The position numbers and the translations under genes were made by a program. Under the pieces are notes generated by a model. It worked only from the letters and a program-made list of their open reading frames with translations. It was not told the origin of the DNA and did no database searches. A DNA stretch of 64,000 nt from Pocillopora damicornis. Taxonomy: Eukaryota. Shown in pieces: positions 16,759-50,400 of this stretch. How positions within the stretch are numbered: position 1 is the first letter of the stretch; the number at the start of each line of letters is the position of its first letter. The stretch is taken from assembly GCF_003704095.1 (NCBI RefSeq), contig NW_020844837.1, positions 124,001 to 188,000 on the forward strand, written 5' to 3'.

Positions 16759-18117
16759 ATGGGAACGAATACGTCCCACTTTAGGCCCACGGAAGAATTT
16801 TCACTCATCAATCGCGCAGCTGTGCCGCGTTTGTCGGGCAGATCACATCGCTCCTTACCAATCGAAAATCGTCATGGTCATTTGTTTGATGTTGTTATTC
16901 AGCTAAAACATGAAGACAAGGACATATATTCGTGTTTCTTTCCAAGTGACGACGATAGCGTCCTTTTAACCGCGTCCAAAGTAGAACAAACAACTTTTTT
17001 CCGCCATAATCGCGAATTTTCATCGATAAGATTATGGGACCTGAATCAGAAACAAATCAACACTGGGTTTTTGGCTGACTTCCCTCGCTCATTTAGATCC
17101 TGCGATTTTTCGCCCGATGGCCAATTGGTGGTTTGTATTTTTAGCGAAGACTCCCTTGCACTGGTGCGAATGAGATCTTGGAAAACTACCAGTGCTGAAG
17201 TTGTTCACATGCGTAGATTTTGGCGAAAGAGACGAGGAGTACTAATGTGTTGTTCGTTCTCTCCTGATGGTCGATCGCTTGTCGTAGCATCTAAATTGAC
17301 AGGTGATTTAAATCATATCTGTATTATTGACATTGCCAGCAAGAAAATGGTCAGAAAAATGAAATCCGCAACGAACTCAAGCTCAAAGATTCGCGGTCAC
17401 CCGCGATCATGTGTATTTTCGCCTGATGGTTTGTTCTTAGCTGTATCGTGCACCTCTGGACAGCTAATTGTTTTCGACACTCAAGACTTTCATATCCATA
17501 GTAGTCTAGACTTGGATACTTCCACATCATCCACGTGTTTATGCCTTCCATTCCGTCACTCAAGTCGCCGCACGCTTAGTTCTCACTTACAATGTTGGTA
17601 TTTGTTTGATCCTCGCTATGGACATAAGTATTTGACATCATGTCTTGAAGATGGCACCATTCAAACATGGTCTCTTACTGCCGACGATCCTGGTCTTACA
17701 TGTATTCAACTTGCTTATGCATTGCAGACTCCATGGCAGAAAATAAGGTCTGCTGCCTTTTCCCCTGATGGTACAATGTTAGCAGTCGGTACATCAGACT
17801 CCAAGGTCTTGGCACTGAATTCAGAAAGTTTAAGTGTATTGTTTGTCCTCAATGCTCATCTTCAACCAGATGGTCTAAGAACATGGTATCAAAACACAGA
17901 AGTGTCTTGCCTGGCCTTTACAAGAACATGCCAGCAGGTTGCTGCTGGTTATAAAGATGGACGCGTCAGGGTTTGGCAGTTGCCATTAATTTTAAATCTT
18001 CAGCACATGTGTAGATTGGTTGTTATTAATCATGTTCCCGCCCAAGAGATTCCAGAGTTACCTCTTCCAGCACATTTAATCAGATATCTTCTGTTCTCCC
18101 CTCTGAAGCAATTCTGA
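16759..18117 (+). CDS. WD40-repeat and SOCS box protein (WSB-like), single coding exon, about 452 aa
   Basis: Repeated FSPDG WD40 blades, IRLWD and VRVW. C-terminal SOCS box LNLQHMCR...LPLPAHLIRYL. First ATG at 16759. Confidence 0.85.
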   Translation: MGTNTSHFRPTEEFSLINRAAVPRLSGRSHRSLPIENRHGHLFDVVIQLKHEDKDIYSCFFPSDDDSVLLTASKVEQTTFFRHNREFSSIRLWDLNQKQINTGFLADFPRSFRSCDFSPDGQLVVCIFSEDSLALVRMRSWKTTSAEVVHMRRFWRKRRGVLMCCSFSPDGRSLVVASKLTGDLNHICIIDIASKKMVRKMKSATNSSSKIRGHPRSCVFSPDGLFLAVSCTSGQLIVFDTQDFHIHSSLDLDTSTSSTCLCLPFRHSSRRTLSSHLQCWYLFDPRYGHKYLTSCLEDGTIQTWSLTADDPGLTCIQLAYALQTPWQKIRSAAFSPDGTMLAVGTSDSKVLALNSESLSVLFVLNAHLQPDGLRTWYQNTEVSCLAFTRTCQQVAAGYKDGRVRVWQLPLILNLQHMCRLVVINHVPAQEIPELPLPAHLIRYLLFSPLKQF

Positions 18118-19367: not shown

Positions 19368-20328
19368 TTATGCCACATGACCAGTTACAGTAAATTGAGA
19401 TGTTTATGTACACAGTAAGCTTATCAAAAGGTATAATTCATTCCATAAAAATTGTTTTCATTTTTGTTATGAATCATATGATTAAAAAACACCTTTGATT
19501 GGGTTGAGTGGCAATTAAATTAAAAAATTTAGGAGTTCTTTTAACAACCAAAGAAATTTTGTTAAGTGAATTTGCAATTTCATATCTGTCATTTACCAAA
19601 TTTTGGAATGCATGAAAGAGGCAACACACTGAATCATTTGATAACAAATTGAAATAAACTATAAACTCTAATTTTGTACTCAAATTTGTGATGTCATTTG
19701 ATAACAATTCAAACTGTTTATACTGCATGTTGATTATGAGGAATTATTTATTTCATGCTAAATACAGTAGTAGTACACTTGGAAAATAGATATGTGTAGT
19801 GCATAACTTGTTGACAGAATAAAATGAAGAAAGTTGAAGTAATCTTGAATTTGAAAAGTTTACTTTAGCACTTGTGCAAGTTAATTACGGGACAGGCAAC
19901 CATAGATTTACTTCCTTTTCTTCTTACTAGTACTTTAAGCCATGCTGCTCTCATCAAGCCAACATAATTGCTCCCTATCAAATGATTTTGGGTTATGTTT
20001 GTGCACTGTAGTGTGGCATTTTGTTTAGTGTTTAGTAGTAAAAGCCCCACAGCACTCCCTTAGAGATACAAGAAACTAGATTCAAAAGGGCAGCAAAAAT
20101 TTGGTGAAAATAAAAGCGTTTGATTTTGTTTTAGGGAATATCGGTCTGTGTACTAAGCTTTTTCTCTTTTTTTTTTTTTGCAGTTGGATTATTAAGTCCT
20201 CTTTGATACATTTACATGTCGCGTATATGAAGTAGTAAAGGTTAAAAGTTATTCGATTATTTCGCATTTGGATTTGTAACGAGGCGCTACTGAGCAACTC
20301 TTCTCTGAAAAGATCGTTTCAGTTTTTG

Positions 20329-23300
20329 ATGGCGAGTATCCAAGCAGATCCCTCTTTTGAGGGAAATTTTAACAGGTACATGGATTTTGATTTTACTATA
20401 GCTTGTTTGTTCTACCTTACGTGACGCTGAAATATTCTAATTTCACCAAAAGATTATCAAAATTATTTAATAATATGACACGTGTGTTTCATGGACCTAT
20501 TGGTATTTTCAATTTTGTACATGTACAAAGCTTTTGTCGTCTTGCTCTGAAAATTACAACTGCCTTCGAAATGCATCAAAGTATTTCATCTTTATATTTT
20601 TGTGGTGACTGAGCGCAATCATATTTTTGCAGGCTCAATGTAAGCGATGAACAGTTGAAAAATCGCATGCTTATGGCGGTGCCGAAGAAAGGAAGACTCT
20701 ACGATCAGTGTATTGCGTTACTGGATAGGGCTGGAGTAAAGGTAATTTGAACAAGACTTAACATTTAAAATTTTCTGTATGGTAAAGATTTACGATAAAG
20801 AAACCACACAGAGGGGGGTGGCTAAGTAAATTCTGCTGTTGTGAGGGTGCGGTCACTGAACGCCGTTACAAAATTGGCGGCTCGATTACCATGGAAATCC
20901 CCCCCCTCACTATGCAAATCTTTGAGAACATAAGTTCCACTGAAGGTGAAATCGAAGCCGTCGAAAAATTGAGCAGTGTCGGAAAAAAATTAATTTATTC
21001 ACATCTGGAAAAAATAAGAAAGATATGTATGGAGAACGCAGTGCTATGTCAGAAAGGTATCGATTATGCTTCTTTCTCCTGAAAAACTGTTGATCAGATG
21101 TTTATTGGTAAAGAGGTCAGAACTAAAAAGTTCACAAATTCAGTTGTGTTGTCGAGAGCATTTAATATTAATTCTCTCATTTGTGGTCACTCTAAGGGTT
21201 TATAGGGTTAAGATTCTTAGTTGTGACATTAAATCCAGTCAAATCCATACCTTCCTTTGTATGATCTGACATACCTCTACTTCCTGAAGAACTGCCAATA
21301 CAAGTTCATTAAACAAATCATTTTCTTACAGTATCGCAAAAAAGCACGTTTGGATTTGGCTCTCTGTACTTCACTTAACAGTAAGTCATTGTCAAAACTC
21401 TAGTACTTGCACATCATAGATATGTATTTCATCTCTCATTGCATTTTTTCCATCCTTTCCATTTGCTGCAATATGGCCTGCAAACAACTACCTGCTCCAT
21501 CTAATTGTCATATGTGTGAATAATTTTCTACTCACACATAGATGATAGCAGTACATTCTTAGAGGGTATTGATTCCTACAAGTTCAAGGGATCTGCTTGT
21601 TTAAAGGCAAAATTCTGTTCATCTGTTAAATTCATGCTGCTTGAGGTCATCACAGGTCTAATTATGGTTGTTTTAACTTTTCAGTGGCTCTTGTCTTTCT
21701 CCCAGCATCGGACATCGCTCTCTATGTTAGTCAAGGAAGGTCAGTATCAGGATCTGTAGGGGAGGTTTTGTGAGTTGAGTTATAAGCCCTAAGTACCTTA
21801 CTCCCTAAGACCTCAACATTAATATGAATGTTCTCTATCACATTCTTTATACATTTCTTGTGGTAGTGACAAGTAGGGTTTGTGGTACAATCAAGAGCTT
21901 TGAATCTTTAACTGGGAATGTTTCCCTTCATCTGATTTGTTTGATCGAGAGATAACTGGATGCTAGTACTTTTGAGCCATTGATGGCATAACTCAAGACT
22001 ACATCCCTTGCCTTGTCATTCAAATCTTACTTTAAGATCATTTGATATCTCCCCCTTTCCAATTAATTATAAGGGTCTGTGTATTTGACCCAGCACATGC
22101 ACAGGACTTCTTTGTTCTCTGGCTTTTTTTTCTTGGACAGGACTCACAAATAAATTTGGGGCGTAACATTCATATTTATAGGATGGATTCTAATAGATTT
22201 GTAGCCAAAAGAGGCTTTGTTGTACTATTATCTGCACTCATGGTTGAGGTAATAATGATAGATAACACTGATATTTTTTGTTACTAAAATTTACATTGAT
22301 TCCTTAGAATTGACATGGGAATCACAGGACGAGATGTTGTGGCAGAAAGTGGAGGAAAAGGTAGTAGTATTTGTTGCATAATTTCTTTTAGCCCCTTTTT
22401 TATGTTTTATATCGTATCGATTTTCTCTTCGCTTTTTTAGTTAATTTCAAACAATGTTTCTTAAGCATATTGCTGAATGATTTCAGTTCATGAACTATTG
22501 AACCTTGGATTTGGCAAGTGCAGGCTGGCAGTACAGGCAAGTACTATCATTACAATTAGTTAATTTTAAGTATCCCTTAAAAATAATCAAGTTATTTTGC
22601 ATGGTATACAGGCACCTGTGTCATCCAAAATTTCAAGTGCAGAGGATCTTGTTGGTATGAACATCTTTGTATTTTTTTTTTTTTCAAATCTTAAATATGG
22701 AATACTAAAACAGATTATAAAAATATTATTAACATCATTTTGATCTGTTTTCTTTACAGGAAAAAGAATAGTCACATCCTTTCCAAATGTCACCAGAAAG
22801 TACCTTTCTGTAAGTTCTTCATACTTGAATACCTAATTTTTAATTTTTTAAAATCACTTTTGACATTTTTGTCATCTATCAATATTTGCACCTGCAGCAA
22901 TATGATCCCAACAACACTACCACGATTAACTATGTCAGTGGATCTGTGGAAGTAAGTCAATTATTATTTTAATATAGCTAGAAAAATGCTCATATTTACA
23001 ACTATATAGTGTATAAAAATAAAAGCTAAGTTTTTTGTTTGTCTCACAATGTAGTCACATGTGATTTAGATTGTGATGTTTCGACTGCATACTGCTAGTC
23101 TTCTTCAGGTGGTGAGGTCGACTGGTCATGCATGATCTTATAAAGCATGATGCTCTGCTGTGATTAGTTGTTTTTTCAACAGCTCTGATTGGTGCATTTC
23201 AATCCTTGCTGTTCACTCAGTGATTTGCTCCCTTGGCAGTCTGCTGCTGTACGGCTCTCCTGTCGTTGTGTTTTTTTAACGTGGGCATCCACGCTTCTGG

Positions 23301-26152
23301 AATTTCTATTCCACTATCCCTGTTGATGTTGTTAGGGTGAAGTCTTATATGAATTGCCTCTTTGACCCTGCGCATGTGGTAATAAGGGTCACGATCAATA
23401 AACTTTACTTCGTTCCAGTGTGCATTGAAGATAAAGGAGGGAATATTCATGCCTTAGTTGTAGGTTCATCAAGATATGACAGATACTGATGGAAGTTTGG
23501 AGAGGACCCAAGAAGCTAGAGATATTAAAAATACTCCAAATAAAAAAATACTCTTATGCATCTTTTCCACTCTTCAGATTTCAAGCATGATTCATATCAT
23601 GATTAACACATACAAATGCTATTAGGGAATCAACCTTTTTTTTTTTGTTTTTTTTTGTTGTTGTCAGGTGGCCTGCAGCCTGGGAGTTGCTGATGCTATA
23701 GGTAAGAGTGTCAACTGATGTCGTCCTCACTGCTACATTTAGCCCCGAGCTTAGAACTCACTTTAGAAGAGAAATATTACAATATAGAGGATATTACATG
23801 GCCCTGCAGTGATAGGAAATTTCTCTTCAAGTGTTAAAAAATATTTTGGAGTGAGCAAAGTGAATAAGTGAAATATTTTAGTTTTCAACACCAATGAAAT
23901 AGCAACAGTGATCCTTTCAAGTGTAAAGATATTATATTTTCAGGCAAAAGCTCACCTCGAGTGATCGAGACAGAATTACCCCTCACAAAAACAATACAAT
24001 AGCAAGCAGACAATTGATTAGAATAAAGGAAAATATTAATTTAATGATAATATAATATTTTCTAATACTAAATTCTTCAAACTCAAGTCATAAGAATTGT
24101 ATAGCAGACAGTAAGGAGAATTAATAATGAGATCGTGGAAGTAAAAGGGTCAAAGGTGTATTTATACATGTTGATAAATATATCTGTCTGCAGCAGTAAC
24201 AGGCTAAGTTGATTCATTATTTTATTGACTGGTTTTTTTCTTGTTTTTTTTCTTTTTTAAGTTGATCTTGTTGAAACAGGGGACACAATGAGAGCATGTG
24301 GACTAGAAATAGTATCTGAAATTATGAAGACTGAGGTGTGATAATTGATCCATTTCTGATTAATTTATAACTAATCTTAAGGTATTAATCAGTCAATTGA
24401 CTGATTAATAAATGCATCAATTTATGAAGTATCAGGCCTGAGGCTGACACAGCTCTTTTATTATAATCATAATTAGAAGGGAGGAGAAGATTTTCAGTGG
24501 TTTCTTTCTAGTCCTCTCTACCTTTTGAAAGAGAATGTTCCCTCTGCAGTTTTGTTTCATTTGATCTTGCTTTTGAGGTTCACATAGAAAAGCATCCCTC
24601 AATTTCTGGAGAGGACTGTAATTATAAACTATTTAACAAATGAAATAAATTAATACAGGGTTTCTTTTTGGTTTTGCTCAATATGTAGGCTGTTTTGATT
24701 GCAAACCCTAAAGCCCACTTTCAGGTTAGTAATTACAGATGGTATTAGTCTTAATGTGCACAGTGACTTTGTATAATTAAATGGTATCTAGAAGTTATTA
24801 GCATTGGGTCATGAACATGCAATTCATATAAACTTGCAGCTCCTCTTTTTTAGCTAAAACTCGCCATGTTCAGCGGCAGATTTTGCTGTATTAAATTTGA
24901 AGCACTGTCCATTTGGATCAGAATATTTGTGTGATAAGATTAAGTAGAATGATTTTAACAAGGGTTTTTATTATTTTATATCATAGGATGTTGTTAAGAC
25001 AGTTACATCAAGAATTGAAGGGATCATCCATGCAGACAAGTATGATTATCTAACTTTTTGGAGTCACATTTTGGCTCATTTTCAATTCATAAAATGCAAT
25101 TTAAGGTTCCAAGCATGATTTAAAGTTTTCAATTGTGTTAATTAGATGATCATTTTGACCAGGTATGTGATGGTTGAATACAATGTGGAAAGAGTAAATC
25201 TCCCAAAAGCACTGAAAATAACACCAGGAAAGGTAAGTTACATGTTTAATCACCAGTGAGTAAACTCATCAAAATGTGTTAAAATGTAGCTAAGCAGGAG
25301 ATTAGAAGTTTCTTGTAAATGAATGAAGACCATATGATTAATATTTTTCTTATGATCTGCTTTTTCTCAGAGGTCTGCCACACTCTCTCCTTTGGATCAT
25401 GAGGCCTGGGTAGCTGTTCAATGTATGATTCTTCAAAATGAGGAAAATCAGGTTCTAGACAAACTGAAAGGTTAGTTTTTAACTCATAAAGTAAGGAATA
25501 CCAGTATGTAGTCTCTTCTAGTTGCATGATTTGTAAGATCTCCCAATTGAAAGAAATTACCCTAAAAACCTTACCTTGAAACTCCAAAATCACTCCTAAT
25601 TATTTACTGCTTCTTCATGCTTATTTTACAGTTTCTGGTTTCATTTTCTTACATATTGGGTAAAATTGCAAACAAAGCAGAAGGGGGCATGCCATCAACA
25701 GCATTTCAAAGGGAGGTGGTTCGGTGGCAGATTCAGTAGTGAGGGATGAACTTTGGCCAAAAGAAAAAAAAATTCCTTTTAAATCTTTAGAGGTTAGCAG
25801 TTCTGGGGTCACCATTGTCACCTTGTCATCAACCATATCCATCCCAATCTTTACCTCTCCCTATACAATATCCATACATTATTCAGCAAACAGGTAATGA
25901 GAATATTCAAAGTTATCAGGTAAAAGCTGCTATCTTGATCTAACACCAAGTTATCATAACTAATTTACAAGGAAATGTGTAGCAGCTACAGGGGAGAATT
26001 AACAATAAGATCTTGGGAGTTAAAGGGTTAAACATGCAAGCTGTTTTGCTTATAACACATTATTGATTTAGTAATTGTACTTGTTATTGTCTATTTTAGA
26101 AATTGGTGCCCATGACATAGTGACCTTCACCATTCAGAACTGCCGTGTTTGA
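20329..26152 (+). CDS. hisG: ATP phosphoribosyltransferase, long form (fungal HIS1-like), 16 exons, 309 aa
   Basis: Exons 20329-20375, 20633-20741, 21332-21380, 21685-21739, 22308-22360, 22487-22536, 22612-22654, 22760-22809, 22898-22951, 23668-23701, 24262-24335, 24689-24724, 24987-25039, 25163-25232, 25371-25470 and 26100-26152 sum to 930 nt with consistent phases. Motifs: MAVPKKGRLY, FLPASDIALYVSQGRIDMGITGRD, LGFGKCRLAVQAP, RIVTSFPN, YVSGSVEVACSLGVADAIVDLVETGDTMR, and C-terminus GAHDIVTFTIQNCRV. Confidence 0.93.
23070..23450 (-). mobile_element. Penelope-like retroelement 3' fragment (GIY-YIG C-terminus plus terminal hammerhead motif) in hisG intron 9
   Basis: ORF fragment HWNEVKFIDRDPYYHMRRVKEAIHIRLHPNNINRDSGIEIPEAW. 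Downstream on the minus strand is CTGAAGA-A-GACT..AGTC-GAAAC-ATC at 23108-23075. Confidence 0.8.
25840..26031. mobile_element. piggyBac-like MITE subfamily copy; a second copy at 26366-26559
   Basis: Ends gatcttgggagttaaagggttaa. The internal sequence matches 26366-26559 and the outer element at 47245-47669. Confidence 0.65.
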
Positions 26153-27838
26153 TGACAGGGTTACTTCTAATTTAGAAGTACATATTATAACTCTAGGAAC
26201 TTTATGTAATGTAGGAATATTTAATAATGGTTATTACCTGTAAGGTACTTTAGTTAGCATATCTCACCTTTGTAAGACTTAACGTATTTATTGTGTCTAA
26301 CTTAAGAAAATATTTTTCCAGTAAAAATGGCATCTAATATTAATATTGAATTAACTTCTGTTGTTTTAACCAGTTAACTCCAGAAGTGACTAACAACCTC
26401 TTACTATAATATCCAAACATTATCCAGCAAATAGGCAATGAGAATATACTCAAACTTAACAGGTAGAAGTTATCTTTATCAACCATGTCACTGATTAAGA
26501 AGGGAATTTGTAGCAGCTAGAGAGGATTGACAATCAGATCTTGGGAATTAAAGGGTTACATGGTTAAAATGACGAGATATTGTTATAACACTCAATGATG
26601 TAAAATCATATTAGTTCTGTAGTAAAACTGCCACCTGTTTTGATGCTGTGTTTGTAAAATGTCCTATAAAGATGTATTTATTTTTCAGAATGGTATATTT
26701 TAAGGCAAAAAGTTAATTTTTCAAAGGTATCTCTAAAAAAGAGTGAAGGAGTATAAAGCATGGGTAGACATGTATCATTATTGACAGTATTTGTGCCTTG
26801 TTTTAAGGATGTTATACTTTTGTTCTGGATCACTTTACAAGAAGTAAAAATGAGAGAGTTAATATTAAATGTTCCAAGCAACATATCTGCATTTGTGAAC
26901 TTTTTCATAATCATGTCCTCTGGACCAATAAACATCTGATCAGCAGTTTTTCATTTGGACACAGCATAATTGATATCTTTCTGACATAACATTGTGTTCT
27001 TTTGGTCAGACACTGAGTCTTAANNNNNNNNNNNNNNNNNNNNNNNNNNNNNNNNNNNNNNNNNGGGGGGGGGTAAGTAGGTAGGTTGAGCAAACACCAG
27101 GGGATGGGGGGTGGGAAAATTGAAATTGACTTGTTTTGTACTGTTACATTCTTACTGAAGCCACGCATCAACTGATAAGTAAATTGTCTGGTAAACTGGA
27201 TTTTGTTGGTGTTTGTCTTACTAAAATTGACTTCCTTGTGATCATTTTTTGCTTGATGTTGTCTCTGGATGTTTGTGAGAAGTTGGATGTGGATCATTTA
27301 TTTAAGAATTATAGGTGTGCAGCATTTTACCTGTAATGATATTGATTTCTTTACAGTTTGAATGTTGTAATGCCTTTATTTCTACATCTACAAGATCAAC
27401 AACAGTCAGCACTTCACAAATTCATCATTAAAAAGTTTCAACAGCTATGGAACATGAGACAGAATTTTTATGGTTTTCATTAAGACTCTAATTAAGGTAG
27501 AATTTTTCATGACAATTGAAGAATAAAAATTGAACATTGATCAGGAAGTACTGGTAATATTAAAGAAAATTATGACAATTCAAAAACTTATTTAATAGTG
27601 TAGAACATGTTAGTAACAGGTACATGTATCTTTACATGAATGAATGTCAGGTTGATTCCATTCCAAAAATCATTCATACCATTCAATGTTTTCAATTATT
27701 GCATTGCGAGTTGTAGTCTCCTGAGAAAAACATTTCTTGCATGTCAAAATTAATTTCAGGTATAAATCGTTACCAGTATCAAATACTTTTTTGGCAGAGG
27801 TAATCTCCGTAAATAATGATTTGAAATAATTTCTGTTC

Positions 27839-34770: not shown

Positions 34771-36903
34771 TCAAGAGCGTAATGTTTCCATTTCGTCAGC
34801 GATTGGATCAAGGCTAAGTAAATTCAACAGATCCTGACACTCTTCCTCGATTATTCGCACGCGCTTAATAGGTGACTCCTTGCGCCATTTTAAATCATTT
34901 TTATGAGAATCTCTAACATGAGAGTAAGGGTTATCCAAGGAATCCTGTAATTCCTCTTCATCAGGATTCGTGCTCTTGATAATCCAATCAATTAAGCTGT
35001 CTGGCATTTCAAAGCCAGCAAATTTATACATCTTCTTAGCTGTGGTAACAGGCATTGTAGTAATTTCTCGGTAGGTTACCTCCATGTAACTGTCTTTCCA
35101 TTCAGAACTTGATTCTCTGCCAAACTGAATATTTGTTTCGATTTTACCACACATCTTTCGCACCAGGGAACGAAATCGGACGTAAGTGAAATCCGAGATC
35201 CACCCGTTCTTTATTCGTGAATTTAGGCTTCCTCTCGGATCGCGCACTATTTGAATGACACGTATGTCAGTGTCGGGATTCGCGTGGAACACGCGTGGGA
35301 TAATGGTCGAGATACTCTCGCGCGGAACGCGAACTTGTCCGACCTTTACTACGCTGTGGTTAAAATCTTTGAGGCAAACCTCTTCTGCAAATTCCGGATA
35401 ACGATGAAGATTAGGCCAGAACCACTTTCCAGTTTTTGTCTTGCGCTTAAATGGAGAAGTTCTGAAGACGTTTTTCTCAAAAACCCCTGCACCCACCCAA
35501 TGCGATGAGGTATGAAAAAGAAAATCTTTTCCCGCTCTGGAATGCGTGAAATGACAAGACAGCAAGGCATTAATCAAATCCAACGTAACTCTAACTTGCT
35601 CTCTACTTCCTGTAATAGATCCTGAAAACCATTTCTTAGTTACCCACAAAGGTTCATAAACTGTAAACATTTGAGGATCAGCAGCAAACATCTTAGTTAC
35701 GAATGTTGTTCCAGAACGATCGTCACCGAAGATAAGGAGACTCTTTCGTTTTTTCACCGAAGTTGTTTTCGGAAGCTGGTCGGGAGTACGTTTTATCTCC
35801 TCATCTTTTAGTCGCGATCTATGACTATGAAGATTTGTTGCCACTTTGCTTGAATTCTGTCCATGATTAAAACTTTGTCGATTCGAATTTTTATTTTGAA
35901 TTCGATCTGAATTTTGCACATTACTAAGCGATGATTTATCTTGATCATTTGAAACTGGCATTTTACCTGACAACAGAGATGTATGAAGAGAACTTTTCAC
36001 CAACATTTGTTGAGTGTCTACAGGACTAACTTTGATGATATTCCCCTTTTCGCTGTTATCATGTTTGAGAAGACGAAGAGGATTTCTGTCGCTCAATTTT
36101 TCTTTTAAGTTGTCTGATACATTGGTACTGAAATTATTTTTTGTTGCGAGATTTTCAGTCTGATTTAAAATTTCGCCTTTGTATATTTTTTCTTGCTGAA
36201 GGATGGACTTTGTGTCATTGTATACCATGTGGTGTTTTGATGAGTTTACAAACTTAAACTGTCTCTCCAGTTTCCTTCTTACTCCGATTTGAGGGTGTAA
36301 CATGTGATGCCGTAGGCGTTCAACCCCCCGGTTGGGCGAGCGGTTGTCAAATCTTCGGGAAGATTTCGCTGTTTCAGAATATCTTTCGGAATCCGATTTG
36401 GACTCTACTGGACTCCCATGTTTATTTCTTGAGAGTTCTCCTGAATCAATTGTATTCATTTTTCTTTCCAGAAATGAAGATACATTCTGAGGAGAACCCA
36501 TTTCATCTTGCTGTTTCAAGTCAGTGACTGGGTCAAAATCATTTGATTCATGTAACACTTTGCTGGACTTGGAGACAGGAACATCAGTTGAAGATAAATT
36601 TTTTGGAGCATCGTAATCGTCCAAGTCAAGCAGATCTTTGAAAGCGTCGTCATTTCTTACAAAATCAGAAATTACCTCTGCCCTCCAACCTACGCCTCCA
36701 AGTTGGGTGTAGGAGTCATTCCGTTGCGATTCTGGTTCATGGATGAATTGTGTAGACAAATCTCTGTTTATAAATGGATTTTCTATCTGATGTACCATAA
36801 CAAATAGATAGAAACCAGAACAAGCTATCACAACCAAGGCAACTTTGATTAGGCTCAGCTGGCTCTGTAGTCCTTTGCGAGTCTTCTTTACTTTGGCAGC
36901 CAT
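34771..36903 (-). CDS. Golgi type II carbohydrate sulfotransferase (CHST1/3/5-like), single coding exon, 710 aa
   Basis: N-terminal TM segment (LIKVALVVIACSGFYLFVMV) and a long polar stem. 5'-PAPS motif RSGTTF, YEPLW, 3'-PAPS motif IVRDPRGSLNSR, VTYREI, KWRK. Confidence 0.85.
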   Translation of the reverse strand: MAAKVKKTRKGLQSQLSLIKVALVVIACSGFYLFVMVHQIENPFINRDLSTQFIHEPESQRNDSYTQLGGVGWRAEVISDFVRNDDAFKDLLDLDDYDAPKNLSSTDVPVSKSSKVLHESNDFDPVTDLKQQDEMGSPQNVSSFLERKMNTIDSGELSRNKHGSPVESKSDSERYSETAKSSRRFDNRSPNRGVERLRHHMLHPQIGVRRKLERQFKFVNSSKHHMVYNDTKSILQQEKIYKGEILNQTENLATKNNFSTNVSDNLKEKLSDRNPLRLLKHDNSEKGNIIKVSPVDTQQMLVKSSLHTSLLSGKMPVSNDQDKSSLSNVQNSDRIQNKNSNRQSFNHGQNSSKVATNLHSHRSRLKDEEIKRTPDQLPKTTSVKKRKSLLIFGDDRSGTTFVTKMFAADPQMFTVYEPLWVTKKWFSGSITGSREQVRVTLDLINALLSCHFTHSRAGKDFLFHTSSHWVGAGVFEKNVFRTSPFKRKTKTGKWFWPNLHRYPEFAEEVCLKDFNHSVVKVGQVRVPRESISTIIPRVFHANPDTDIRVIQIVRDPRGSLNSRIKNGWISDFTYVRFRSLVRKMCGKIETNIQFGRESSSEWKDSYMEVTYREITTMPVTTAKKMYKFAGFEMPDSLIDWIIKSTNPDEEELQDSLDNPYSHVRDSHKNDLKWRKESPIKRVRIIEEECQDLLNLLSLDPIADEMETLRS

Positions 36904-41546: not shown

Positions 41547-44239
41547 TTATAGTTTGAAGAAATTTTCAGTAAGATAATCTTTGACTTTGGGCCATATTAC
41601 ATTTGTTTCTGTTCCAGAAAATGATTCAAGTATTCCTTGTTTCCTGTAAACAAAACAGCATTTAAAAAGTGTGAAATATCATAAAATATGAAGTTTCTGT
41701 GAAGACTAAATCACACAAAATGGTTCAACATACTGTACTTGTTTGTACTTACGTATAAAAATCAATAAGTGGCTTTGTCATTTCCTCATACTGTTTTAAT
41801 CTCTGTCGCACAGTCTCAGGCTAGAGGAAAAATGCCAGCATCATACAAATTTTAATAATTTCATTCAGTTAGTGTTTTTTTTACAATCCTTTCTTTCTCT
41901 TTTACATGCCGTTGTTTTTAAGAACACTTCCTGATTAATTAAAGGGCTTTTGATTTCAAAAAATACATCAAAACTTTCACAGTAAGCCAGATAACAAACC
42001 TTATCATCATCTCTTTGAACAAGATCCTCACCTGTGTCATCATCTTTTCCCTAAAGAGAAATTTAATTGCTAATTTTAAAACAACACAACACATAACTTA
42101 AAAACCTCACTGCCTTGATTTTTTTCTCAGCAAAGCAATCTTGCTGTCTTAATGTTAGTACTACTTGCAGACATCATCTTGAGAAGGTTGGAAAGCAGAC
42201 AGTTCACAGTCTGTCCAGGTCTTGCATTTACCTTCTTGTCTCCTTGATATTATTGTTAAGAGACCACCCCAGGGAACCTATAAGAACTTCAACCCTAAGC
42301 AATTACTATCCTCCTCCATAACTACAGCTAATACAGTGAAGATCAACTTTGAACAATTTGTCTTGCATCTACCAAAGTCACCTTTTCCTTTTGACCCTAT
42401 CTCCTTGTTGTAACTAAGAGCTGAGAGATTGAAAAGACTTTTCCTAAAATAAACACCAGCACCTGAGGTAAACAGTCCTATATTACTTAATAATTAAATC
42501 ACATAATTGTAAATATTCAGAAGAACAATACAACTGGATTGTTATCAAATCACAGTGTCACTTAATGTTATTCAAATGTCTTCAATAACAGAAAAATTTC
42601 ATGATTAAAACCCTTCCTATGCTTAAACACCCAGATGTTAATCTTCATAAAAGTTGCTAATCATCACAAATTGTAAAGATTAACTGCAGTCATAAAATAC
42701 TTCATACTGTTCACGTACTGGTACTTTAGGAGGGTTGAAATCTAAGTTGTAAGTCTTCCCACTCCCTGGATGTATCCAACGTTTCTAGGAAGCGAAAAGT
42801 AAACATATTTCATATTTCATTTCAAGACATAATTATCTTTCTTTTATTCACACATTAGTGACAACAGCGCTGAAAATACCAGCACAACAGTACTTGGTTT
42901 ACCTCTGTTCTAACTTGTTTAGTGCCACAAAAGGCTGCTTTTTTTGATTAACTATATATTATTTTCTTTTGGACTTATTTGACTTCACATTACTTAAATT
43001 GATCTGCAGAGTAACTACTAGCTATTATCACTCTAACCTTTTTGAAATTTTCATTAGATTATCTCTTGTTATGGATCATGAGAGACCACCTAATGTGACT
43101 CAACATGGTACAAATTGATGTTTCAGAAATAGAAAAAGAAAACTTACTGAAATTCTATCAATTATGGTTTCAAATGGAACATCTAAGTTTATAACAACAT
43201 CAAGCTCTTGTTTCTCGCCCAGCTTCTCTGCCTGTACAACAGTTCTTGGAAAACCTAAAAATAGAGGTGTAGGTAGAAGAGTAGTAAATACACACCAGGA
43301 TCATTCTCAAGAGACCTCACCCTTTATGCCTGGGTTTTCTGTCCTCTGCCCATATTCCTGCTTATACCCGTTTGTTAAAATATTATAGGCTATAGTCTGA
43401 TCCTCTAAGCCCCTTTTCTAATGAAACAAAGTCACAAATTATGTAGAATACACAGGTAAGTGTTTACCCAACAGTGAAGGCCAATGTGGCAAAACTAGTT
43501 ATCTTTGGAAGGCACTGTTTTCATTTAAAGCAAGAAATTTGAAAGTCAAGTTGCAGGAAACAAATAAATCAAAGGGCCTTTCCCATGACAAGACACATTG
43601 AGGAAAAAGTGATCCATGCATTGTGTGGAAATAGTTTTTCTTCTGAACAGAAACGACCCTCTCCTTGCATTCCTCACAAAATGGACGTCTTTTCCACGCT
43701 TCAGATAAGAAACCTCACTGTTGTTGGCATCTGTTTATCACTTCAAATTTCATACAAATCAAAGAGAGCTTTGGATACTGTATAGTTTTTATTAGCTTAT
43801 GACTCTCAAAATACATCCAATCAAAATTAATTTTCTATTAAAACTGTGTAAGCAATTTGCATTATAAGTATATCATTTCGAATCAATTTTGCTCAGATCA
43901 GCTGAGGAGATGTTTGCACCAAGGACATATCCTGAAATTGTAAAATCCTGAAAACTGCCTTGACATGTACCTACCATCTAAAAGCCAGCTTCCTCCAGAT
44001 AACTCCTTCATCTTGGCCATTATCAGTTCTATCATGACTTCATCAGGTACAAGTCCTCCTTTTTCCACGATCGCTTTTGCTTTCAAGCCAACTTCTGTAC
44101 CTTCTTTAATTTGGGATCGGAGCACATCTCCACTCGATAAATGTGTTACCTTAAAAGTACTTACAATGCGTTCAGATACAGTTCCTTTACCTGATCCTGG
44201 AGGGCCCATGATGAGGGCGCGCACTGGCTTCGACGACAT
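41547..44239 (-). CDS. AK3: Mitochondrial GTP:AMP phosphotransferase AK3/AK4 orthologue, 6 exons, 217 aa
   Basis: Exons 44239-43975, 43254-43148, 42784-42719, 42050-42000, 41820-41753 and 41643-41547. P-loop [75 protein letters not shown]. Confidence 0.93.
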
Positions 44240-44442
44240 GTTCGACAGGTGTATTTGGCGAATATGATTGATAGGCGAGAGCGCTGCACGAAGTAGTCGA
44301 AGGCGATGGGCAGAGCGCATATCTATATCAGTCAAGGAAATATTATTGGAACTAAAGGAAAAAAAATGGTAGACTGGGAACCAAAAACATTACGCTGACC
44401 AAGTCACAGTTGGCTCTAATATTTGCACGTGTGTGTTTTAAA
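44240..44442. promoter_or_regulatory. Bidirectional promoter between AK3 and PUM3
   Basis: Divergent ATGs are only about 200 bp apart. E-box CACGTG at about 44426 and a YY1-like AAAATGGCGG overlapping the PUM3 start. Confidence 0.65.
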
Positions 44443-47400
44443 ATGGCGGACGCTGAAAATCAGAAGAGGTACTGTGTGGAAAATTTTTCCTTAAAAACTC
44501 GGAGTACAGTTGTTTTTTGTTCTCTGTATAATACTTCTAGATTAAAAAAATATCACCAGAGTTAAAAGGCTGTCGTTTTTTGTTTTACCCACGGGGACAC
44601 TCTTTGTAATGAGGACTTTTTTCCTCATCTGTTTCAAATGAACGCTGTGCAAAACGCTCTGCGAAAAGACAAGGGAACATTTTTTGCCGTTACAATTGAC
44701 TCACTCTCTTTACTTTTATTTCATCAGGTCAAGGAACTTCAAGAAGAAGTTCAAAGGGAAGGGTGATGATGCTAAACGGAAATTTAAGCCAAAAAAGTTT
44801 TCCAAGGATTTTAGGGGAGAGAATTCTCCTGGACAAAAACGGAAAGCTAACGACACAAATGCAGATGGTTACAGAAAGAAGTGGAAGGGTGAAATAGGAA
44901 GTCAAGATGGTAAAAAAGGATATAGACGATATGAAAACAATGATAAAAGTTTTTCAGTTAATGGCAAAGGATCACGGAACAGTTATGTGAAAGGAAACTT
45001 TGTTGGTGATAAAGCCATGAAACGAAAGTTTAGTGATGGTAAGGGATCTGACTTCGGGAAAAAGAAAAATTTTTCCAGTTCTTGGGAAAATAAGAATGGT
45101 GAGTATATCGTGTCGTGATTCTCTGTATTCTGTAAATTAACCCTTGAACTCCCTAAGAGTAACTGGTATCAGTATCTTATTTCTCCTTTTGATATCACTT
45201 CTGAATCAAACAATTAGGTCACGAGAATAAAGGAAATGATCACCAACTGAAGTAGCTCTTGATTGTAAGATGAATTCTCCATGTCAAAACCTTAGGAAGT
45301 GTAGAGAGAACAGTATGGAGAATATATATTCTGAACTTTAATTGTGGGAAATAGTAGTAAATGCTGTTGAAAAGTGCTCAATACACATGAGTGTAGAATG
45401 AAATACAGTTCAAGTGACTAAAATGAAACACGCATGATTCCCTGTTACTCTGAGTTTTGTTCTTACGCACTCATCAGACAGATTTAATGAAAGTGCATAA
45501 GCAGGAAACTCAGAGTAACAGGGAATCATGCGTGTTTCATTTTAGTCATTTTGAACTGTATTCTGAACTTTATAAAGTAGTGCTGTCAGGTAGACTGTGC
45601 AGCTTGATTTCTCTTCTGAGGCAATGTCAGCATGAGAATATTAAAATGAGAGTCATGAAGTTGTTCTTCTCTTTTGGTACTGTCTTCTTCTTTTTCACAC
45701 AGTGAAATGCACTTTGACAGTGTTAACAACAAAGAGCTTTAGCATTCTCTGGAAGTCCATGGTTTTTGTATATGCACATGCAAGGGAATTCCATGTGCTC
45801 TTTGTTTAAGAGTTTCTTGCATGTGCTTTGAGTGCAAACTTTCAGTATTGTTTGGAGTCGCAGCTTATCATTCAGGCAGTTTCTCCACCCCTTTCCTCTC
45901 TCTTTCCACTGTTTATTCAGTGTGACAGGTGTCTGTTTCCCTTTCCTGTGTGGAGGCTTATGGCTGAGTTGCCAGGATTTACCAGCCATGGGAGCAGTCT
46001 CCATTTAGGAGCTGACTGCCAATAGTGGAAGCTCCTTGTGGAAGTCTATTACATGTACTTGAGTTCACAAAGTATGTTTTCAATAAATTGTAAATTTGGG
46101 TGTCTCCACTTAATCTTGTAGAATCTGATGAGAAGCCCAATATCTGGCAAATGAAGAAAAAAGAAAGAAAAGACTTTCGCCGCCAACAAGATGAAAACTA
46201 TGATCTGGTTCATGGTCTTAAAAAACTCTATGAGACTATTAGAAGGTGTGGTAGCTTGAAAGTTGTAAGGCTGCAAATACAATCCAGAAAATTTCCATTC
46301 CAATTTTCCTAGTGAAACAGGGTTGTGCACTGGTCCTGGTATACATTCAACTCTTTAAAAATAAAATGTGGATCCAAATGTCTTTTATGTCTTTTCTCAC
46401 CTCAACTATTATACTTATTAGGAGGAAAAATTGATGCCACAGTGATTGATATTTTTTATTTTATCTGTTTTTCAGAAAGAAGTGCTCTAAGGCAGAGAAG
46501 GCAGAATTGGTTGAGAAGATACTGAGTCTAATTGCTGGTCATACTCATGATGTGAGTACAAGAATTTAGGGATGAATTAAATTCTAAGCAAGTTATTTAC
46601 ATCTTTCCAATTTCATTTCAAAATATGTTTAGTAATTGATTTTCCCCTCTCTCTACTTAACTGTAATTCCAGGTAATTTTCAAACATGATACAGGGCGTG
46701 TGATTCAGGCTTGTGTTAAGTTTGGTACTGTAGAGCAAAGACAGAAGTTGTTTGAGCAATTTAAAGGTAATTCATTTTCTTGGAAAAATATTAAAACTAA
46801 AAATTTGTTTCAATCAAAAATGATTTCATAACCAGCTCAAGTCATGTCTGAATTTTTGTGTTCAAGGTGATTTTGGAGAACTTATCAAGTCAAAATATTC
46901 CAAGTTCTTCATCAAAAAATTGTTAATTTATGGGTAAGTACCTTATCAGCATTCTTTAACTGAACTTGGCACTTTTGTTAATGGTGTAATTTAGCTAACT
47001 GGGCAGAGGTTTTTCATTTTCATATTCTTAGTTCAGTCTGAATATAGACAGTAAACTGAAAGTAAAACAGTATTGTTGTCTGATTTCTGTTCCATCATTT
47101 TGAGAAATCCCTAATTTTAATAAGCAAATGTTTTCCACGGTCCACAATCATGGACACTACCTTTGATAGATTCTATTGGAAAAGACACTCTGGTTTTTGT
47201 GGCTTGAAATGATTAACTCTCAACATTCATACCCTTTTATATGATTAACTCTTTAACTTCCAAGATCTGATTATTAACCCTTTAACTCCCAGATAAAATT
47301 TGTAATTCTCCTTACTGTCAACTATACAATGCTTATAACTTTAGCTCAGCGAATTTAGTGTTGGATCAACTAATTATTTGCAAATTGATATTTTTCTTTA

Positions 47401-50400
47401 TTCTCATCACTTATCTGTTTGATATTGTATTGATATTGTATGGAGAAATTCTGTCTTGATCTTTCATGGGAGTTAAAGGGTCAATTATCCCCTTCAGTTG
47501 CTACACATTCCCTAGTAAATCAGTTATGAGAATTTGATTTTAGATCTAGATGACAACTTAACTTCGAGTAGATAATTTTGAGTACTGTCATTGTCCCTTT
47601 GTTGATTGATGTATTTGTATCATAGGAAGAAGTTTCATATGAATTACTTCTGGGACTTAATGGATTTAAGTACATAAAAGAAAACTGTTGAGGGTGTTTT
47701 AATCAGTGTAACATCTCATTTTCAATATCTTTAGAACTTACTTGTTTTATAAGTAAATTAAATGAAGAGAAAAATTTATTATTTAAGATAATGGGAAATT
47801 TTGGTCTTTTCAATCAGAACAAAGAAACAGCGGGATGTTATTATCAAGTGCTTTTATGGGCAAGTTCGCAAACTTATCAGACACAAGGTGAGATTATGAT
47901 TTTAATGATGATACTGATAAGGCTCTCTATGACATAAGCTTGATTTATCAATATTTATATCTATGTATGGCTAACTTAGACAATTTTTATCAATTTTTAG
48001 GAGGCATCATCTATTCTAGAAACTATATACAGTGATTATGCAAACTCTGCCCAAAAAGCCCATCTTATACAGGAATTCTATGGAGCTGACTTTGCTTTTT
48101 TCAAGGTACATGTAATCTAGCATTAAAAAAATTAATAAAAAAATGAAAAAAAAATTCCATCCAAGTGATCTTTTGTTATCTCCAGATTCCTATAGTTAAT
48201 TTTGAGTAAATTACCATCATGTAGTTGTGCTTGCCTCAACTTTCATCTGCCTTTCTAGTCATCAGAGCTAAATTCTTTGGAAAAAGTTTTGCAATCAGAT
48301 CCAGCAAGGAAAACTGGAATCCTCAAATACATGAAAGATGCCTTGCTGCCTCTTATAGACAGGTAAAGTTTAAAGATGAAAATATCTTTAATAACCTTGA
48401 ACCCTTGACAACTTAGATCTCATTAGCAATTCTGATTCCTTGTTGCTGGCTTAGAAATCTTATGATATTATTTGTGAGAACTTGGTATTGGGTCAACTTA
48501 TAATCCCCCAGTTGATACTTTACTTTATTCTCATCACTTGTGTGCTTGATGTTGTGGTGATATTGTGAAGAGAAATTCTGTCTTGATCACTCACAGGAGT
48601 TAAAGGGTTAAGGACTTAGTACACCCAGGCCAGATTAAGTATTAAACTTTTTACATACAGCACGAAAACAAAGAGGTTAAATCCAACTTCTACTTGACTG
48701 GATTTAATGCAAAATTTCTTTTTTCTCTCTGATTATGTCAAGCATTGTACCATCAAGTAACAGCTGGTGTTTTGCTTAATTTTCATGTAAATATATTTGA
48801 ACACAGGATGAAAATCTGCAAGATTATCTGTCAAAGTTGAAAATGATATCTTAATACAATTTGTATTGCCTGTGGATATAGATAAACAGCATAATATTAA
48901 TTTATTTTGTATTACTTTTTTCCATAGATCTGTCATTGGTCATAGTATAATTCACAGAGTCCTTCTTGAATACCTCACATATGCTGATGAAAATGCAAGA
49001 TCAGTACGTACTTCATCCTCTTTTTGTACCAGTACATTGTGAAGCCTCACTTCTTATACATAGTTGTATCTTTTCTGTAGGAAATGATAGAGCTAATCAA
49101 AGATTCTGTTGTTCTCATTCTTCATACTCATGATGGAGCCAGAGTTGGTATGCATTGTTTGTGGTATGGGACTGTAAAGGTAAGTCTAGATTCTGTTGTT
49201 TATTTATGTTGAAATCTGGTAACTTTAATTTTTGAAATATCTTTTGATGTCTCATATGTTTACCAGCAACAAAATAATTTGATTAAGCTATTTGACTTTA
49301 TAACAACCTGAGAGGTTGAGTTCTAAGTATGACATGTTACATAGTAAATTTAACTTGAGTTTTTCAGACCTGAAATAAAGTGAGTTGGTAAGAATTACTT
49401 TTGACATTATTTCATTTTACAAACCCTCACCAATATTTAAAGACTTAAGGTGATTTTTTTGTTGTTCTTGTATCTCTTTCAAGGATCGTAAAGTACTTGT
49501 CAAGTCCTTCAAAAGTTATTATGTAAAGATCTGCAAAGTAAGAGTTGTATTATGCTGTGATGTGAATTGAATGAATGCATCAGGAGGTCTTAAATTTTCC
49601 TCATGGTGTACTTCTTATGAGTTAGTCTGCCAAAATCTTAGGTCAGTCTCTTATGGTCTTAAGTTGGTTCCCTAACATCAAAGATTGGTCAGCAAGCAAT
49701 ATCTTACATTTGCTTTGTTCCCTAACATCTTTGACAAGTTATTTCACTTCTTACACAATGGCTCAAATTTAATTACAACACAGTGTTACTAATCATCCCA
49801 TATCTAACATACTATCCAGTCATTGTGTGTCTCTCTTGGATTTCAGAGGTGTAAACATAAACATATGCAAAGAGAAGTGTTGTTGTGTCACCATATTTGA
49901 CTTAAACATATGGTGGGAACAGTTGATCATGAGAACAATTCCACATTTATAGTAAACTTACTTGAATATTGATTGTTGCTGTTTAATTTACAGGAAGAAT
50001 TTGGACATCTTGTACTGTTAGCATTATTTGACTGTGTTGATGACACAGTGCTTGTCAAAAAGATTATGTTCTCGGTGAGATTTAAACTGTGTAGTTTTTC
50101 CTCCAAGGTTATGTATGTGACTGATTTTTTAGTTTAGCATACAGTTTTGTCAAACAGGTAGTGACTCAGGTGTGTGAAAAGTGTTAAAAAAGGTTATATT
50201 TTGTCTCTAAACAGATAGGTGAATGGAAATGATGTGATTGTTTGGATTGAGCATTCACCTCTCAGCATTAGCCTTCCAAGAAATACATTGACATTGGTTA
50301 GAATTAGGACTGGAGACTTTGAGAGCACAAAATTTATATAAACAAGAAGTCTAACAACTAAAATGACCTAAATGTGACAATTCTGGACAATGAAAATTAT

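What the first reader, a model, noticed from the sequence alone, without database searches (positions are those of the whole stretch)
20329..26152. Hidden 16-exon histidine-biosynthesis gene (ATP phosphoribosyltransferase) in an animal genome
Seen: sixteen exons of 34-109 nt splice in phase into an uninterrupted 309-aa ORF with the ATP-PRT motifs and a C-terminal regulatory domain ending NCRV, as I recall for yeast His1. No ORF in the supplied track reveals it. Its introns carry the same MITE families as neighbouring host genes, so it is not a bacterial contaminant. Known: ATP-PRT catalyses the first, feedback-inhibited step of His synthesis; the long form needs no HisZ; most animals have lost the pathway. 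A fungal-like His pathway has been reported in 'robust' corals, so the phenomenon is probably not new in kind. Inference: the host makes its own histidine, and the gene is a vertically retained opisthokont relic rather than recent HGT.
Basis: partly seen in the sequence, partly recalled or inferred. Interest (0 to 1): 0.85.

Follow-up and report, generated by a model that had tools for sequence, protein, structure and literature searches.

The report
Coral host histidine-synthesis gene HIS1
This is a real, spliced and expressed gene of the stony coral Pocillopora for the first enzyme of histidine synthesis, part of a complete pathway that most animals lack, but the pathway was already described for robust corals in 2018.

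Summary
Sixteen + strand exons (34-109 nt, 20329-26152) add up to 930 nt, giving 309 codons plus TGA with no internal stop. Fourteen introns are GT-AG and one is GC-AG. Searched exon by exon, the pieces match HisG and then HisG_C in colinear order, so this is a long-form ATP phosphoribosyltransferase. RNA contigs from three independent studies carry 13 of the 15 junctions exactly. One 959-nt contig has the length expected for exons 1-15 joined. A DNA run shows no junctions. The gene is single-copy and sits beside a WD40/SOCS-box gene. Its introns hold a roughly 168-bp repeat with over 4,000 candidate copies genome-wide. Orthologues in two other anthozoan assemblies keep the same exon boundaries under purifying selection. 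The genome is Pocillopora damicornis and holds all six other His pathway genes. Contamination, a pseudogene and recent transfer are therefore rejected. Ying et al. 2018 (Genome Biology) already reported this pathway, including ATP-PRT, in robust corals such as Stylophora. This scan had already noted three sister genes on other DNA of this genome. Not tested here: the whole-protein search and deep phylogeny (joined step left out), and enzyme activity.

The parts
20329..20375 (+). exon 1 (47 nt): start codon and variable N-terminus
   Evidence: Junction 20372/20630 (cut +3) in three RNA runs. In-frame stop upstream at 20236-20238.
20633..20741 (+). exon 2 (109 nt): N-terminal strand and helix of HisG, with the AVPKKGRL motif
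   Evidence: TIGR00070 positions 3-24. PDB ATP-PRT 7dah_A residues 15-42, E 0.044. E. coli HisG residues 6-32. Single copy in the genome.
21332..21380 (+). exon 3 (49 nt)
   Evidence: Junctions on both sides in RNA contigs. 100% amino-acid identity to L016 and 88% to L014.
21685..21739 (+). exon 4 (55 nt)
   Evidence: RNA junctions. 94% amino-acid identity to L014 and 82% to L016.
22308..22360 (+). exon 5 (53 nt): HisG profile 14-30
22487..22536 (+). exon 6 (50 nt): HisG profile 31-51, followed by the only GC-AG intron
   Evidence: The junction skips 75 nt with 8 nt of ambiguity, and GC..AG is the only canonical placement.
22612..22654 (+). exon 7 (43 nt)
   Evidence: RNA junctions.
22760..22809 (+). 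exon 8 (50 nt): HisG profile 65-80
   Evidence: E. coli HisG residues 124-139. RNA junctions.
22898..22951 (+). exon 9 (54 nt), with the SGSVE motif
   Evidence: Upstream junction in RNA. The depth in its bin equals contig depth x 54/200.
23668..23701 (+). exon 10 (34 nt)
   Evidence: Its junctions are not among those listed. They are implied by the 959-nt X1 contig, whose length is 3 nt plus exons 1-15 counted from 20250. 100% amino-acid identity to L016.
24262..24335 (+). exon 11 (74 nt): PRPP-binding loop region (DLVETGDT), HisG profile 109-132
   Evidence: Pfam E 4.5e-5. TIGR00070 positions 155-177. E. coli HisG residues 169-192.
24689..24724 (+). exon 12 (36 nt)
   Evidence: RNA junctions on both sides.
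24987..25039 (+). exon 13 (53 nt): linker into the regulatory domain
   Evidence: RNA junctions.
25163..25232 (+). exon 14 (70 nt): HisG_C profile 4-26
   Evidence: Pfam E 6.3e-5. TIGR03455 positions 29-50.
25371..25470 (+). exon 15 (100 nt): HisG_C profile 27-59
   Evidence: Pfam 30.5 bits, above the cut-off of 23.5. TIGR03455 positions 53-84.
26100..26152 (+). exon 16 coding part (53 nt): ends NCRV then TGA; the 3' UTR continues
   Evidence: Junction 25468/26098 (cut +2) in three RNA runs. RNA contigs run on past 26249.
25864..26031 (.). high-copy interspersed repeat of about 168 bp in intron 15; a related copy lies at 23955-24154 in intron 10
   Evidence: 4,264 first-look candidates genome-wide; 40 were scored, at 93-96% identity. 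Depth up to 1e5. Other copies in the window. No TIR found.
23050..23449 (.). second repeat family, in intron 9
   Evidence: Depth 150-1,800, against 5-8 for single-copy DNA in run X19.

Best explanation
This is the nuclear HIS1 gene of the robust stony coral Pocillopora damicornis. It encodes a 309-residue long-form ATP phosphoribosyltransferase: a HisG catalytic core followed by the HisG_C regulatory domain. The gene is transcribed and its 15 introns are removed. By homology, the enzyme condenses ATP with PRPP as the first step of histidine synthesis, is feedback-inhibited by histidine through its C-terminal domain, and needs no HisZ. It feeds a complete fungal-type pathway encoded elsewhere in the same genome: a HIS4-type PRA-CH/PRA-PH/histidinol-dehydrogenase fusion, HIS6, a HIS7 HisHF fusion, an intronless HIS3, HIS5 and HIS2. 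Shown here: the gene structure, family, expression and splicing, host location, conservation under purifying selection, and the full pathway gene complement. Inferred: catalytic activity, feedback control, histidine prototrophy, and descent from the opisthokont ancestor with loss in other animals.
For: Structure. Family: HisG pieces at profile positions 14-30, 31-51, 65-80 and 109-132, and HisG_C pieces at 4-26 and 27-59, abut at exon borders. TIGR00070 and TIGR03455 give the same order. PDB ATP-PRTs are the only hits for exon 2. RNA: 13 of 15 junctions appear in polyA or oligo-dT RNA contigs of three studies and none in the DNA run. The 959-nt contig length fits exons 1-15. Intron depth is 0-9 against 120-430 on exons. 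Host gene: it is single-copy and has a WD40+SOCS-box neighbour. A host repeat with over 4,000 candidate copies lies in its introns. Its G+C content is uniform with the flanks. Constraint: L016 shares 70.6% amino-acid identity over 282 codons, with pS 0.85 against pN 0.19, and the exon boundaries of exons 2-16 are the same. L014 gives dN/dS 0.126. DNA similarity is confined to the exons. Pathway. Species: the IGPD ORF is 100% identical to pdam_00000220 of Pocillopora damicornis, and the 234 Mb assembly size matches PMC6208414. Literature: PMC6214176 reports the same gene family and pathway in Fungia, Goniastrea and Stylophora.
Against: There is no biochemical evidence for any animal ATP-PRT (PMC9506716). 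The whole protein was never scored against a profile because the joined step was left out. Each HisG piece alone is below Pfam's cut-off of 25.5 bits (best 23.9); only the HisG_C pieces reach theirs. Similarity to E. coli HisG is weak. Logan contigs cannot give strand or expression level. Expression of the other six genes was not checked here.
Confidence: 0.9

Rival explanations
1. Ancient horizontal acquisition. The gene, and perhaps the whole pathway, entered an ancestor of scleractinians and corallimorpharians from a fungus-like or other eukaryotic donor. It later gained introns and host repeats, rather than being retained since the opisthokont ancestor.
For: Almost all other animals lack the pathway, so vertical descent needs many independent losses. 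The best SwissProt matches of the coral proteins are fungal (PMC6214176). IGPD is intronless. The published ATP-PRT tree is unrooted and has no unicellular holozoans. No deep tree could be built here.
Against: Seven unlinked genes would each have had to be transferred. The published tree separates the coral ATP-PRTs from fungi, Symbiodinium, plants and bacteria, and synteny shows loss in complex corals. Choanoflagellates retain His pathway families, so the animal ancestor's lineage had them (PMC6040629). Fifteen introns with boundaries conserved across saturated synonymous divergence point to great age.
Confidence: 0.2
2. Contaminant or symbiont DNA (Symbiodiniaceae, fungus or bacterium) mis-assembled into the coral genome.
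For: His genes are unexpected in animals. Nematostella 'His' hits were bacterial contamination (PMC6214176).
Against: The gene has fifteen spliceosomal introns. It shares a contig with a WD40/SOCS-box gene. A coral repeat with over 4,000 candidate copies sits inside its introns. Its G+C of 33-37% matches the flanks. An independent DNA run covers the locus contiguously at single-copy depth. Orthologues exist in other coral assemblies.
Confidence: 0.01
3. A transcribed relic: the gene is spliced and expressed, but the enzyme or the pathway is no longer functional, or serves something other than net histidine supply.
For: No enzymology or labelling data exist. The coral can obtain histidine from symbionts and food.
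Against: The frame is intact over 16 exons. Purifying selection is strong (dN/dS 0.126; pN 0.19 with saturated pS). All seven genes are kept intact in the same genome. The HisG PRPP-loop region and the regulatory domain are conserved.
Confidence: 0.07

Closest known systems
Robust-coral ATP phosphoribosyltransferase K00765 of Ying et al. 2018 (Stylophora_pistillata_8185, ffun1.m4.9038, gasp1.m3.565; PMC6214176)
   Same: The start (MASIQ/MARIQ) and the end (IQNCRV) are the same, and the exon-2 peptide is near-identical. The sequences were read off the supplement. The exon-2 peptide of P0002/L014 equals the published Goniastrea one. The pathway context is the same.
   Different: The species differs: Pocillopora is not mentioned in that paper. 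The window's RNA-supported model has all 16 exons. The published Fungia model lacks the stretch of exons 13-14 and the Goniastrea model lacks that of exons 7-8, both in frame. That comparison was made by eye, not by a tool alignment.
Saccharomyces cerevisiae His1 (P00498), long-form ATP-PRT
   Same: Both are about 300 residues with HisG plus HisG_C. They share the PKKGRL, SGSVE and DLVE(S/T)G(D/E)TMRA motifs and the C-terminal NCRV. Both are unlinked from the other HIS genes.
   Different: The coral gene has 15 introns. No tool-computed identity is available because the joined step was left out. Yeast His1 function is proven; the coral enzyme is untested.
Bacterial long-form HisG (E. coli b2019; PDB 7dah, 2vd3)
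   Same: The domain order and length are the same. E. coli residues 6-32, 124-139 and 169-192 align colinearly to exons 2, 8 and 11. PDB hits for exon 2 are.
   Different: Similarity is weak (44-56% over short pieces, E 0.05-0.8). The bacterial gene lies in an operon and has no introns.
Short-form HisG with HisZ (hetero-octameric ATP-PRT)
   Same: The catalytic HisG fold is shared.
   Different: The short form lacks HisG_C and needs HisZ. The coral gene has HisG_C. HisZ was not searched for.

Membership tests
ATP phosphoribosyltransferase, long form (HisG-L; Pfam PF01634 + PF08029; TIGR00070 + TIGR03455) | HisG catalytic domain | tested here: met
   Exons 5, 6, 8 and 11 hit PF01634 at positions 14-30, 31-51, 65-80 and 109-132. 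The hits are colinear and abut at exon borders, with 14.5+16.8+14.7+23.9 bits. TIGR00070 pieces run from 3-24 to 155-177. No single piece passes the whole-protein cut-off.
ATP phosphoribosyltransferase, long form (HisG-L; Pfam PF01634 + PF08029; TIGR00070 + TIGR03455) | C-terminal regulatory domain HisG_C, which separates the long form from the short form | tested here: met
   Exon 14 hits PF08029 at 4-26 (23.5 bits) and exon 15 at 27-59 (30.5 bits); the cut-off is 23.5. TIGR03455 hits are at 29-50 and 53-84.
ATP phosphoribosyltransferase, long form (HisG-L; Pfam PF01634 + PF08029; TIGR00070 + TIGR03455) | PRPP-binding loop region (D-x-V-x-(S/T)-G-x-T) | tested here: met
   Exon 11 begins DLVETGDT. 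It aligns to HisG 109-132 and to E. coli HisG 169-192. The role of the motif is from general knowledge of the family.
ATP phosphoribosyltransferase, long form (HisG-L; Pfam PF01634 + PF08029; TIGR00070 + TIGR03455) | Whole-protein score above the curated cut-offs | not tested
The joined 309-residue protein has no reference.
ATP phosphoribosyltransferase, long form (HisG-L; Pfam PF01634 + PF08029; TIGR00070 + TIGR03455) | ATP + PRPP condensation activity, inhibited by histidine | not testable with these tools
   This needs an enzyme assay or complementation. None has been published for a coral enzyme.
Robust-coral fungal-type histidine pathway (Ying et al. 2018) | All seven genes covering the ten steps are present in one host genome | tested here: met
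   HIS1 is in this window. The HIS4-type fusion lies at C2740:164272-168461 in the order PRA-CH, PRA-PH, HDH. HIS6 is on C538, HIS7 on C130, HIS3 on C3883 and intronless, HIS5 on C2801 and HIS2 on C2969.
Robust-coral fungal-type histidine pathway (Ying et al. 2018) | The host is a member of Robusta | tested here: met
   The IGPD ORF is 100% identical to a Pocillopora damicornis protein. The next hits are P. verrucosa, Stylophora, Desmophyllum and Orbicella. That Pocilloporidae belong to Robusta is general knowledge.
Robust-coral fungal-type histidine pathway (Ying et al. 2018) | Coral ATP-PRTs form their own clade apart from fungi, Symbiodiniaceae, plants and bacteria | not tested
   Known only from PMC6214176 Fig. 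6. No outgroup sequences could be reached by reference here.

The most novel reading that the evidence does not exclude
The enzyme is active and histidine-regulated, and the pathway makes Pocillopora a true histidine prototroph. That would be the first biochemically proven case in an animal. The RNA-verified 16-exon model gives a complete cDNA to test by his1 or hisG complementation. A weaker extension is that the intact orthologue in the unidentified, much more distant assembly L016 shows the gene reaches beyond the published robust-coral set.
Probability: 0.65. Interest if true: 0.45.

Novelty: already known. Interest (0 to 1): 0.2.

Why it matters
Animals are textbook histidine auxotrophs. 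A host-encoded pathway changes how one reads coral nutrition and dependence on Symbiodiniaceae. It also shows that loss of essential-amino-acid synthesis was not complete at the root of animals. That point was made in 2018 for robust corals. This window adds a clean, RNA-verified full-length gene model for Pocillopora damicornis and evidence of purifying selection. It also shows that two of the published coral models appear to miss exons. These are useful for annotation and for a complementation experiment, but they are not a discovery.

Tried and rejected
1. The six-frame search of the genome with PF01634 found nothing at E <= 0.001. The exons are too short, so this says nothing against the gene.

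2. The one representatives search, run with exon 2, returned only prokaryote-style read-through ORFs from coral genome contigs, with no full-length ATP-PRT.

3. Two word-index searches with such ORFs (P0011 residues 12-55; P0001 residues 100-146) found nothing further. No fungal, holozoan or dinoflagellate homologue could therefore be obtained by reference, and no tree was built.

4. The ESM Atlas search with exon 2 gave only weak leads: score 0.78, with one cluster carrying HisG in 12% of members.

5. tblastn of E. coli HisG against the window gave only three weak colinear pieces.

6. Looking for the WD40/SOCS neighbour upstream of the orthologues in L014 and L016 gave no hit within the 8-10 kb available. 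Synteny was therefore not shown here.

7. A search for terminal inverted repeats in the intron elements found none, so 'MITE' is not supported and 'interspersed repeat' is used instead.

8. The IGPD search returned 120 coral proteins only, so it named the species but gave no deep relatives.

9. The joined spliced protein was not sent to any search, fold or family tool. It was assembled only inside the script, to count its length and stops.

10. Contamination and pseudogene readings were considered and rejected (see rivals).


Full report
**Observation.** Lengths are 34-109 nt and total 930 nt, giving 309 codons plus TGA with no internal stop. The protein starts MASIQA and ends QNCRV. The 15 introns measure 75-716 nt. 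Fourteen are GT-AG and intron 6 (22537-22611) is GC-AG. The ATG is preceded by an in-frame stop at 20236-20238.

The joined protein was never sent to a search, family or fold tool. It was built only inside the script, to count length and stops.

**What it encodes.**
- Pfam on the exons, or on the small open frames that contain them, gives HisG at profile positions 14-30 (exon 5), 31-51 (exon 6), 65-80 (exon 8) and 109-132 (exon 11).
- HisG_C follows at 4-26 (exon 14) and 27-59 (exon 15).
- The pieces are colinear and abut at exon borders, which chance hits would not do.
- NCBIfam repeats the pattern: TIGR00070 from 3-24 (exon 2) to 155-177 (exon 11), then TIGR03455.
- Exon 2 alone finds only ATP phosphoribosyltransferases in the PDB.
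- E. coli HisG (L017) aligns weakly but colinearly to exons 2, 8 and 11.
- Having HisG_C makes this the long form, which by established knowledge of the family works without HisZ and is feedback-inhibited by histidine.
- Caveat: each HisG piece alone is under Pfam's cut-off. Only the HisG_C pieces reach theirs.

**Expression and splicing.** RNA runs hold 0.22-0.28 of the sampled words of the 6-kb stretch, roughly what exons plus UTRs would give. DNA runs hold 0.84-0.92. I laid contigs from three RNA studies (a polyA metatranscriptome, an oligo-dT coral library and a third run) and one DNA run.
- All three RNA runs carry junctions for introns 1-8 and 11-15 at the predicted places. The DNA run carries none and covers the introns at single-copy depth.
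- The junctions of introns 9 and 10 were not among those listed.
- One X1 contig of 959 nt has a length equal to 3 nt plus all of exons 1-15 counted from 20250. The depth in the bins of exons 9 and 10 also matches that contig.
- Intron depth in RNA is 0-9, against 120-430 on exons.
- Contigs cannot give strand or expression level.

**A host gene, not a contaminant.**
- Exon 2 is single-copy in the 234-Mb genome.
- G+C is 32-37% across the gene and its flanks.
- A 456-residue ORF 2.5 kb upstream carries WD40 repeats and a SOCS box. Further neighbours are a sulfotransferase and an adenylate kinase exon.
- The repeat of about 168 bp in intron 15 has 4,264 first-look candidates across the genome. 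The 40 that were scored are 93-96% identical.
- Related copies lie in intron 10 and at five other places in the window.
- No terminal inverted repeats were seen, so I call it an interspersed repeat, not a MITE.

**Species.** The intronless IGPD ORF of the same genome is 100% identical to 'pdam_00000220 [Pocillopora damicornis]'. The assembly size of 234 Mb matches Cunning et al. 2018 (PMC6208414). Pocillopora belongs to the robust corals.

**Age and constraint.** ORFs reading through exon 2 in other coral assemblies led to two orthologous loci.
- L014 has the exon-2 peptide of the published Goniastrea protein. Exons 2-7 are 64-94% identical at the amino-acid level, and dN/dS is 0.126 over 116 codons.
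- L016 comes from an unidentified, more distant assembly. It has exons 2-16 in order, each matched essentially end to end and flanked by AG and GT.
- L016 shares 70.6% amino-acid identity over 282 codons. pS is 0.85 (saturated) against pN 0.19.
- Nucleotide similarity is confined to the exons.
- The gene is therefore old in this lineage and under purifying selection. Recent transfer and pseudogene status are rejected.

**Pathway.** The same genome holds all the other pathway genes.

| Gene | Location | Evidence |
|---|---|---|
| HIS4-type fusion (order PRA-CH, PRA-PH, histidinol dehydrogenase) | contig C2740 | |
| Eukaryotic-type HisA (HIS6) | C538 | |
| His_biosynth pieces starting in a 381-residue ORF (HIS7-like) | C130 | |
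| Intronless IGPD (HIS3) | C3883 | |
| HisC-like aminotransferase, four colinear pieces summing to about 288 bits (HIS5) | C2801 | |
| PHP-type histidinol phosphatase (HIS2) | C2969 | |

The 'would refute' condition of missing downstream genes is not met. Earlier notes of this scan on the same genome had already flagged the HIS5, HIS4 and HIS7 genes, with follow-ups reaching the same verdict.

**Comparison with what is known.** Ying et al. 2018 (PMC6214176) reported a complete fungal-like histidine pathway in robust corals, absent from complex corals and sea anemones.
- It covered Fungia, Goniastrea and, from annotation, Stylophora.
- It included an ATP-PRT tree that separates corals from fungi, Symbiodinium, plants and bacteria.
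- It also gave synteny evidence for loss in complex corals.
- Its supplement prints the coral proteins and yeast His1.
- Read by eye, the Fungia model lacks the stretch of exons 13-14 and the Goniastrea model that of exons 7-8, both in-frame omissions. The RNA-supported model here is complete.
- Richter et al. 2018 (PMC6040629) found His pathway families retained in choanoflagellates, which makes vertical retention plausible.
- Salazar et al. 2022 (PMC9506716) note that the function of the coral proteins is still unconfirmed.

**What remains open.**
- Vertical descent against ancient transfer was not tested here. No full-length outgroup could be reached by reference and the joined query was left out.
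- I put about 0.7 on vertical retention and 0.2 on ancient transfer, mainly from the literature and from the need for seven separate transfers.
- Enzyme activity and prototrophy are inferred.

**Verdict.** The thing is real and biologically remarkable for an animal, but it has been published since 2018. It counts as already known and of low interest as a discovery. Its modest value is a verified gene model for complementation tests.

Noticed in passing
window:25864-26031 and window:23955-24154; also 6733-6926, 9779-9865, 26501-26558, 47274-47551, 57038-57234: An interspersed repeat of about 168 bp has 4,264 first-look candidates genome-wide, many at 93-96% identity, and is very abundant in RNA contigs too (depth up to 1e5). 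No terminal inverted repeats were detected, so it may be a SINE-like element rather than a MITE.
   Followed up: partly
window:23050-23449 (intron 9): A second repeat family shows depth 150-1,800 in both DNA and RNA contigs. It was not characterised.
   Followed up: no
window:22537-22611: Intron 6 uses a GC donor in this genome. The orthologous intron in L016 starts GT (L016 after 10257).
   Followed up: partly
PMC6214176 supplementary files 6 and 8, compared with window exons 7-8 and 13-14: The published Fungia ATP-PRT model appears to skip the stretch of exons 13-14, and the Goniastrea model that of exons 7-8. Both are in-frame omissions of 123 and 93 nt. L014, which carries the Goniastrea exon-2 peptide, does contain an exon-7 match at 17836-17877, so these look like annotation gaps. 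The comparison was made by eye only.
   Followed up: partly
L001:1447-2046:- (G000:C3883): The imidazoleglycerol-phosphate dehydratase gene is a single 200-codon ORF without introns, unlike the 16-exon HIS1. It is 100% identical to pdam_00000220, and 87-94% identical copies occur in Stylophora, Desmophyllum and Orbicella.
   Followed up: partly
L016:7986-13276 (ENA ERZ25073755 contig): An intact ATP-PRT orthologue from an unidentified organism is only about 71% identical, but has the same exon boundaries. It may come from outside the published robust-coral set (corallimorpharian or another hexacoral?).
   Followed up: partly
window:16747-18117:+, 34771-36903:-, 43898-44335:-: The neighbours are a large single-exon WD40 + SOCS-box ORF (456 aa), a 710-aa ORF with a sulfotransferase domain, and an adenylate kinase exon.
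   Followed up: partly
P0001 / P0137 (Logan and ENA contigs of a close relative): In a closely related Pocillopora genome, exon 1, intron 1 and exon 2 are open in one frame, giving a 146-148 aa read-through ORF. In this window the same intron has stops. This is an artefact of prokaryote-style gene calling, not an isoform.
   Followed up: no
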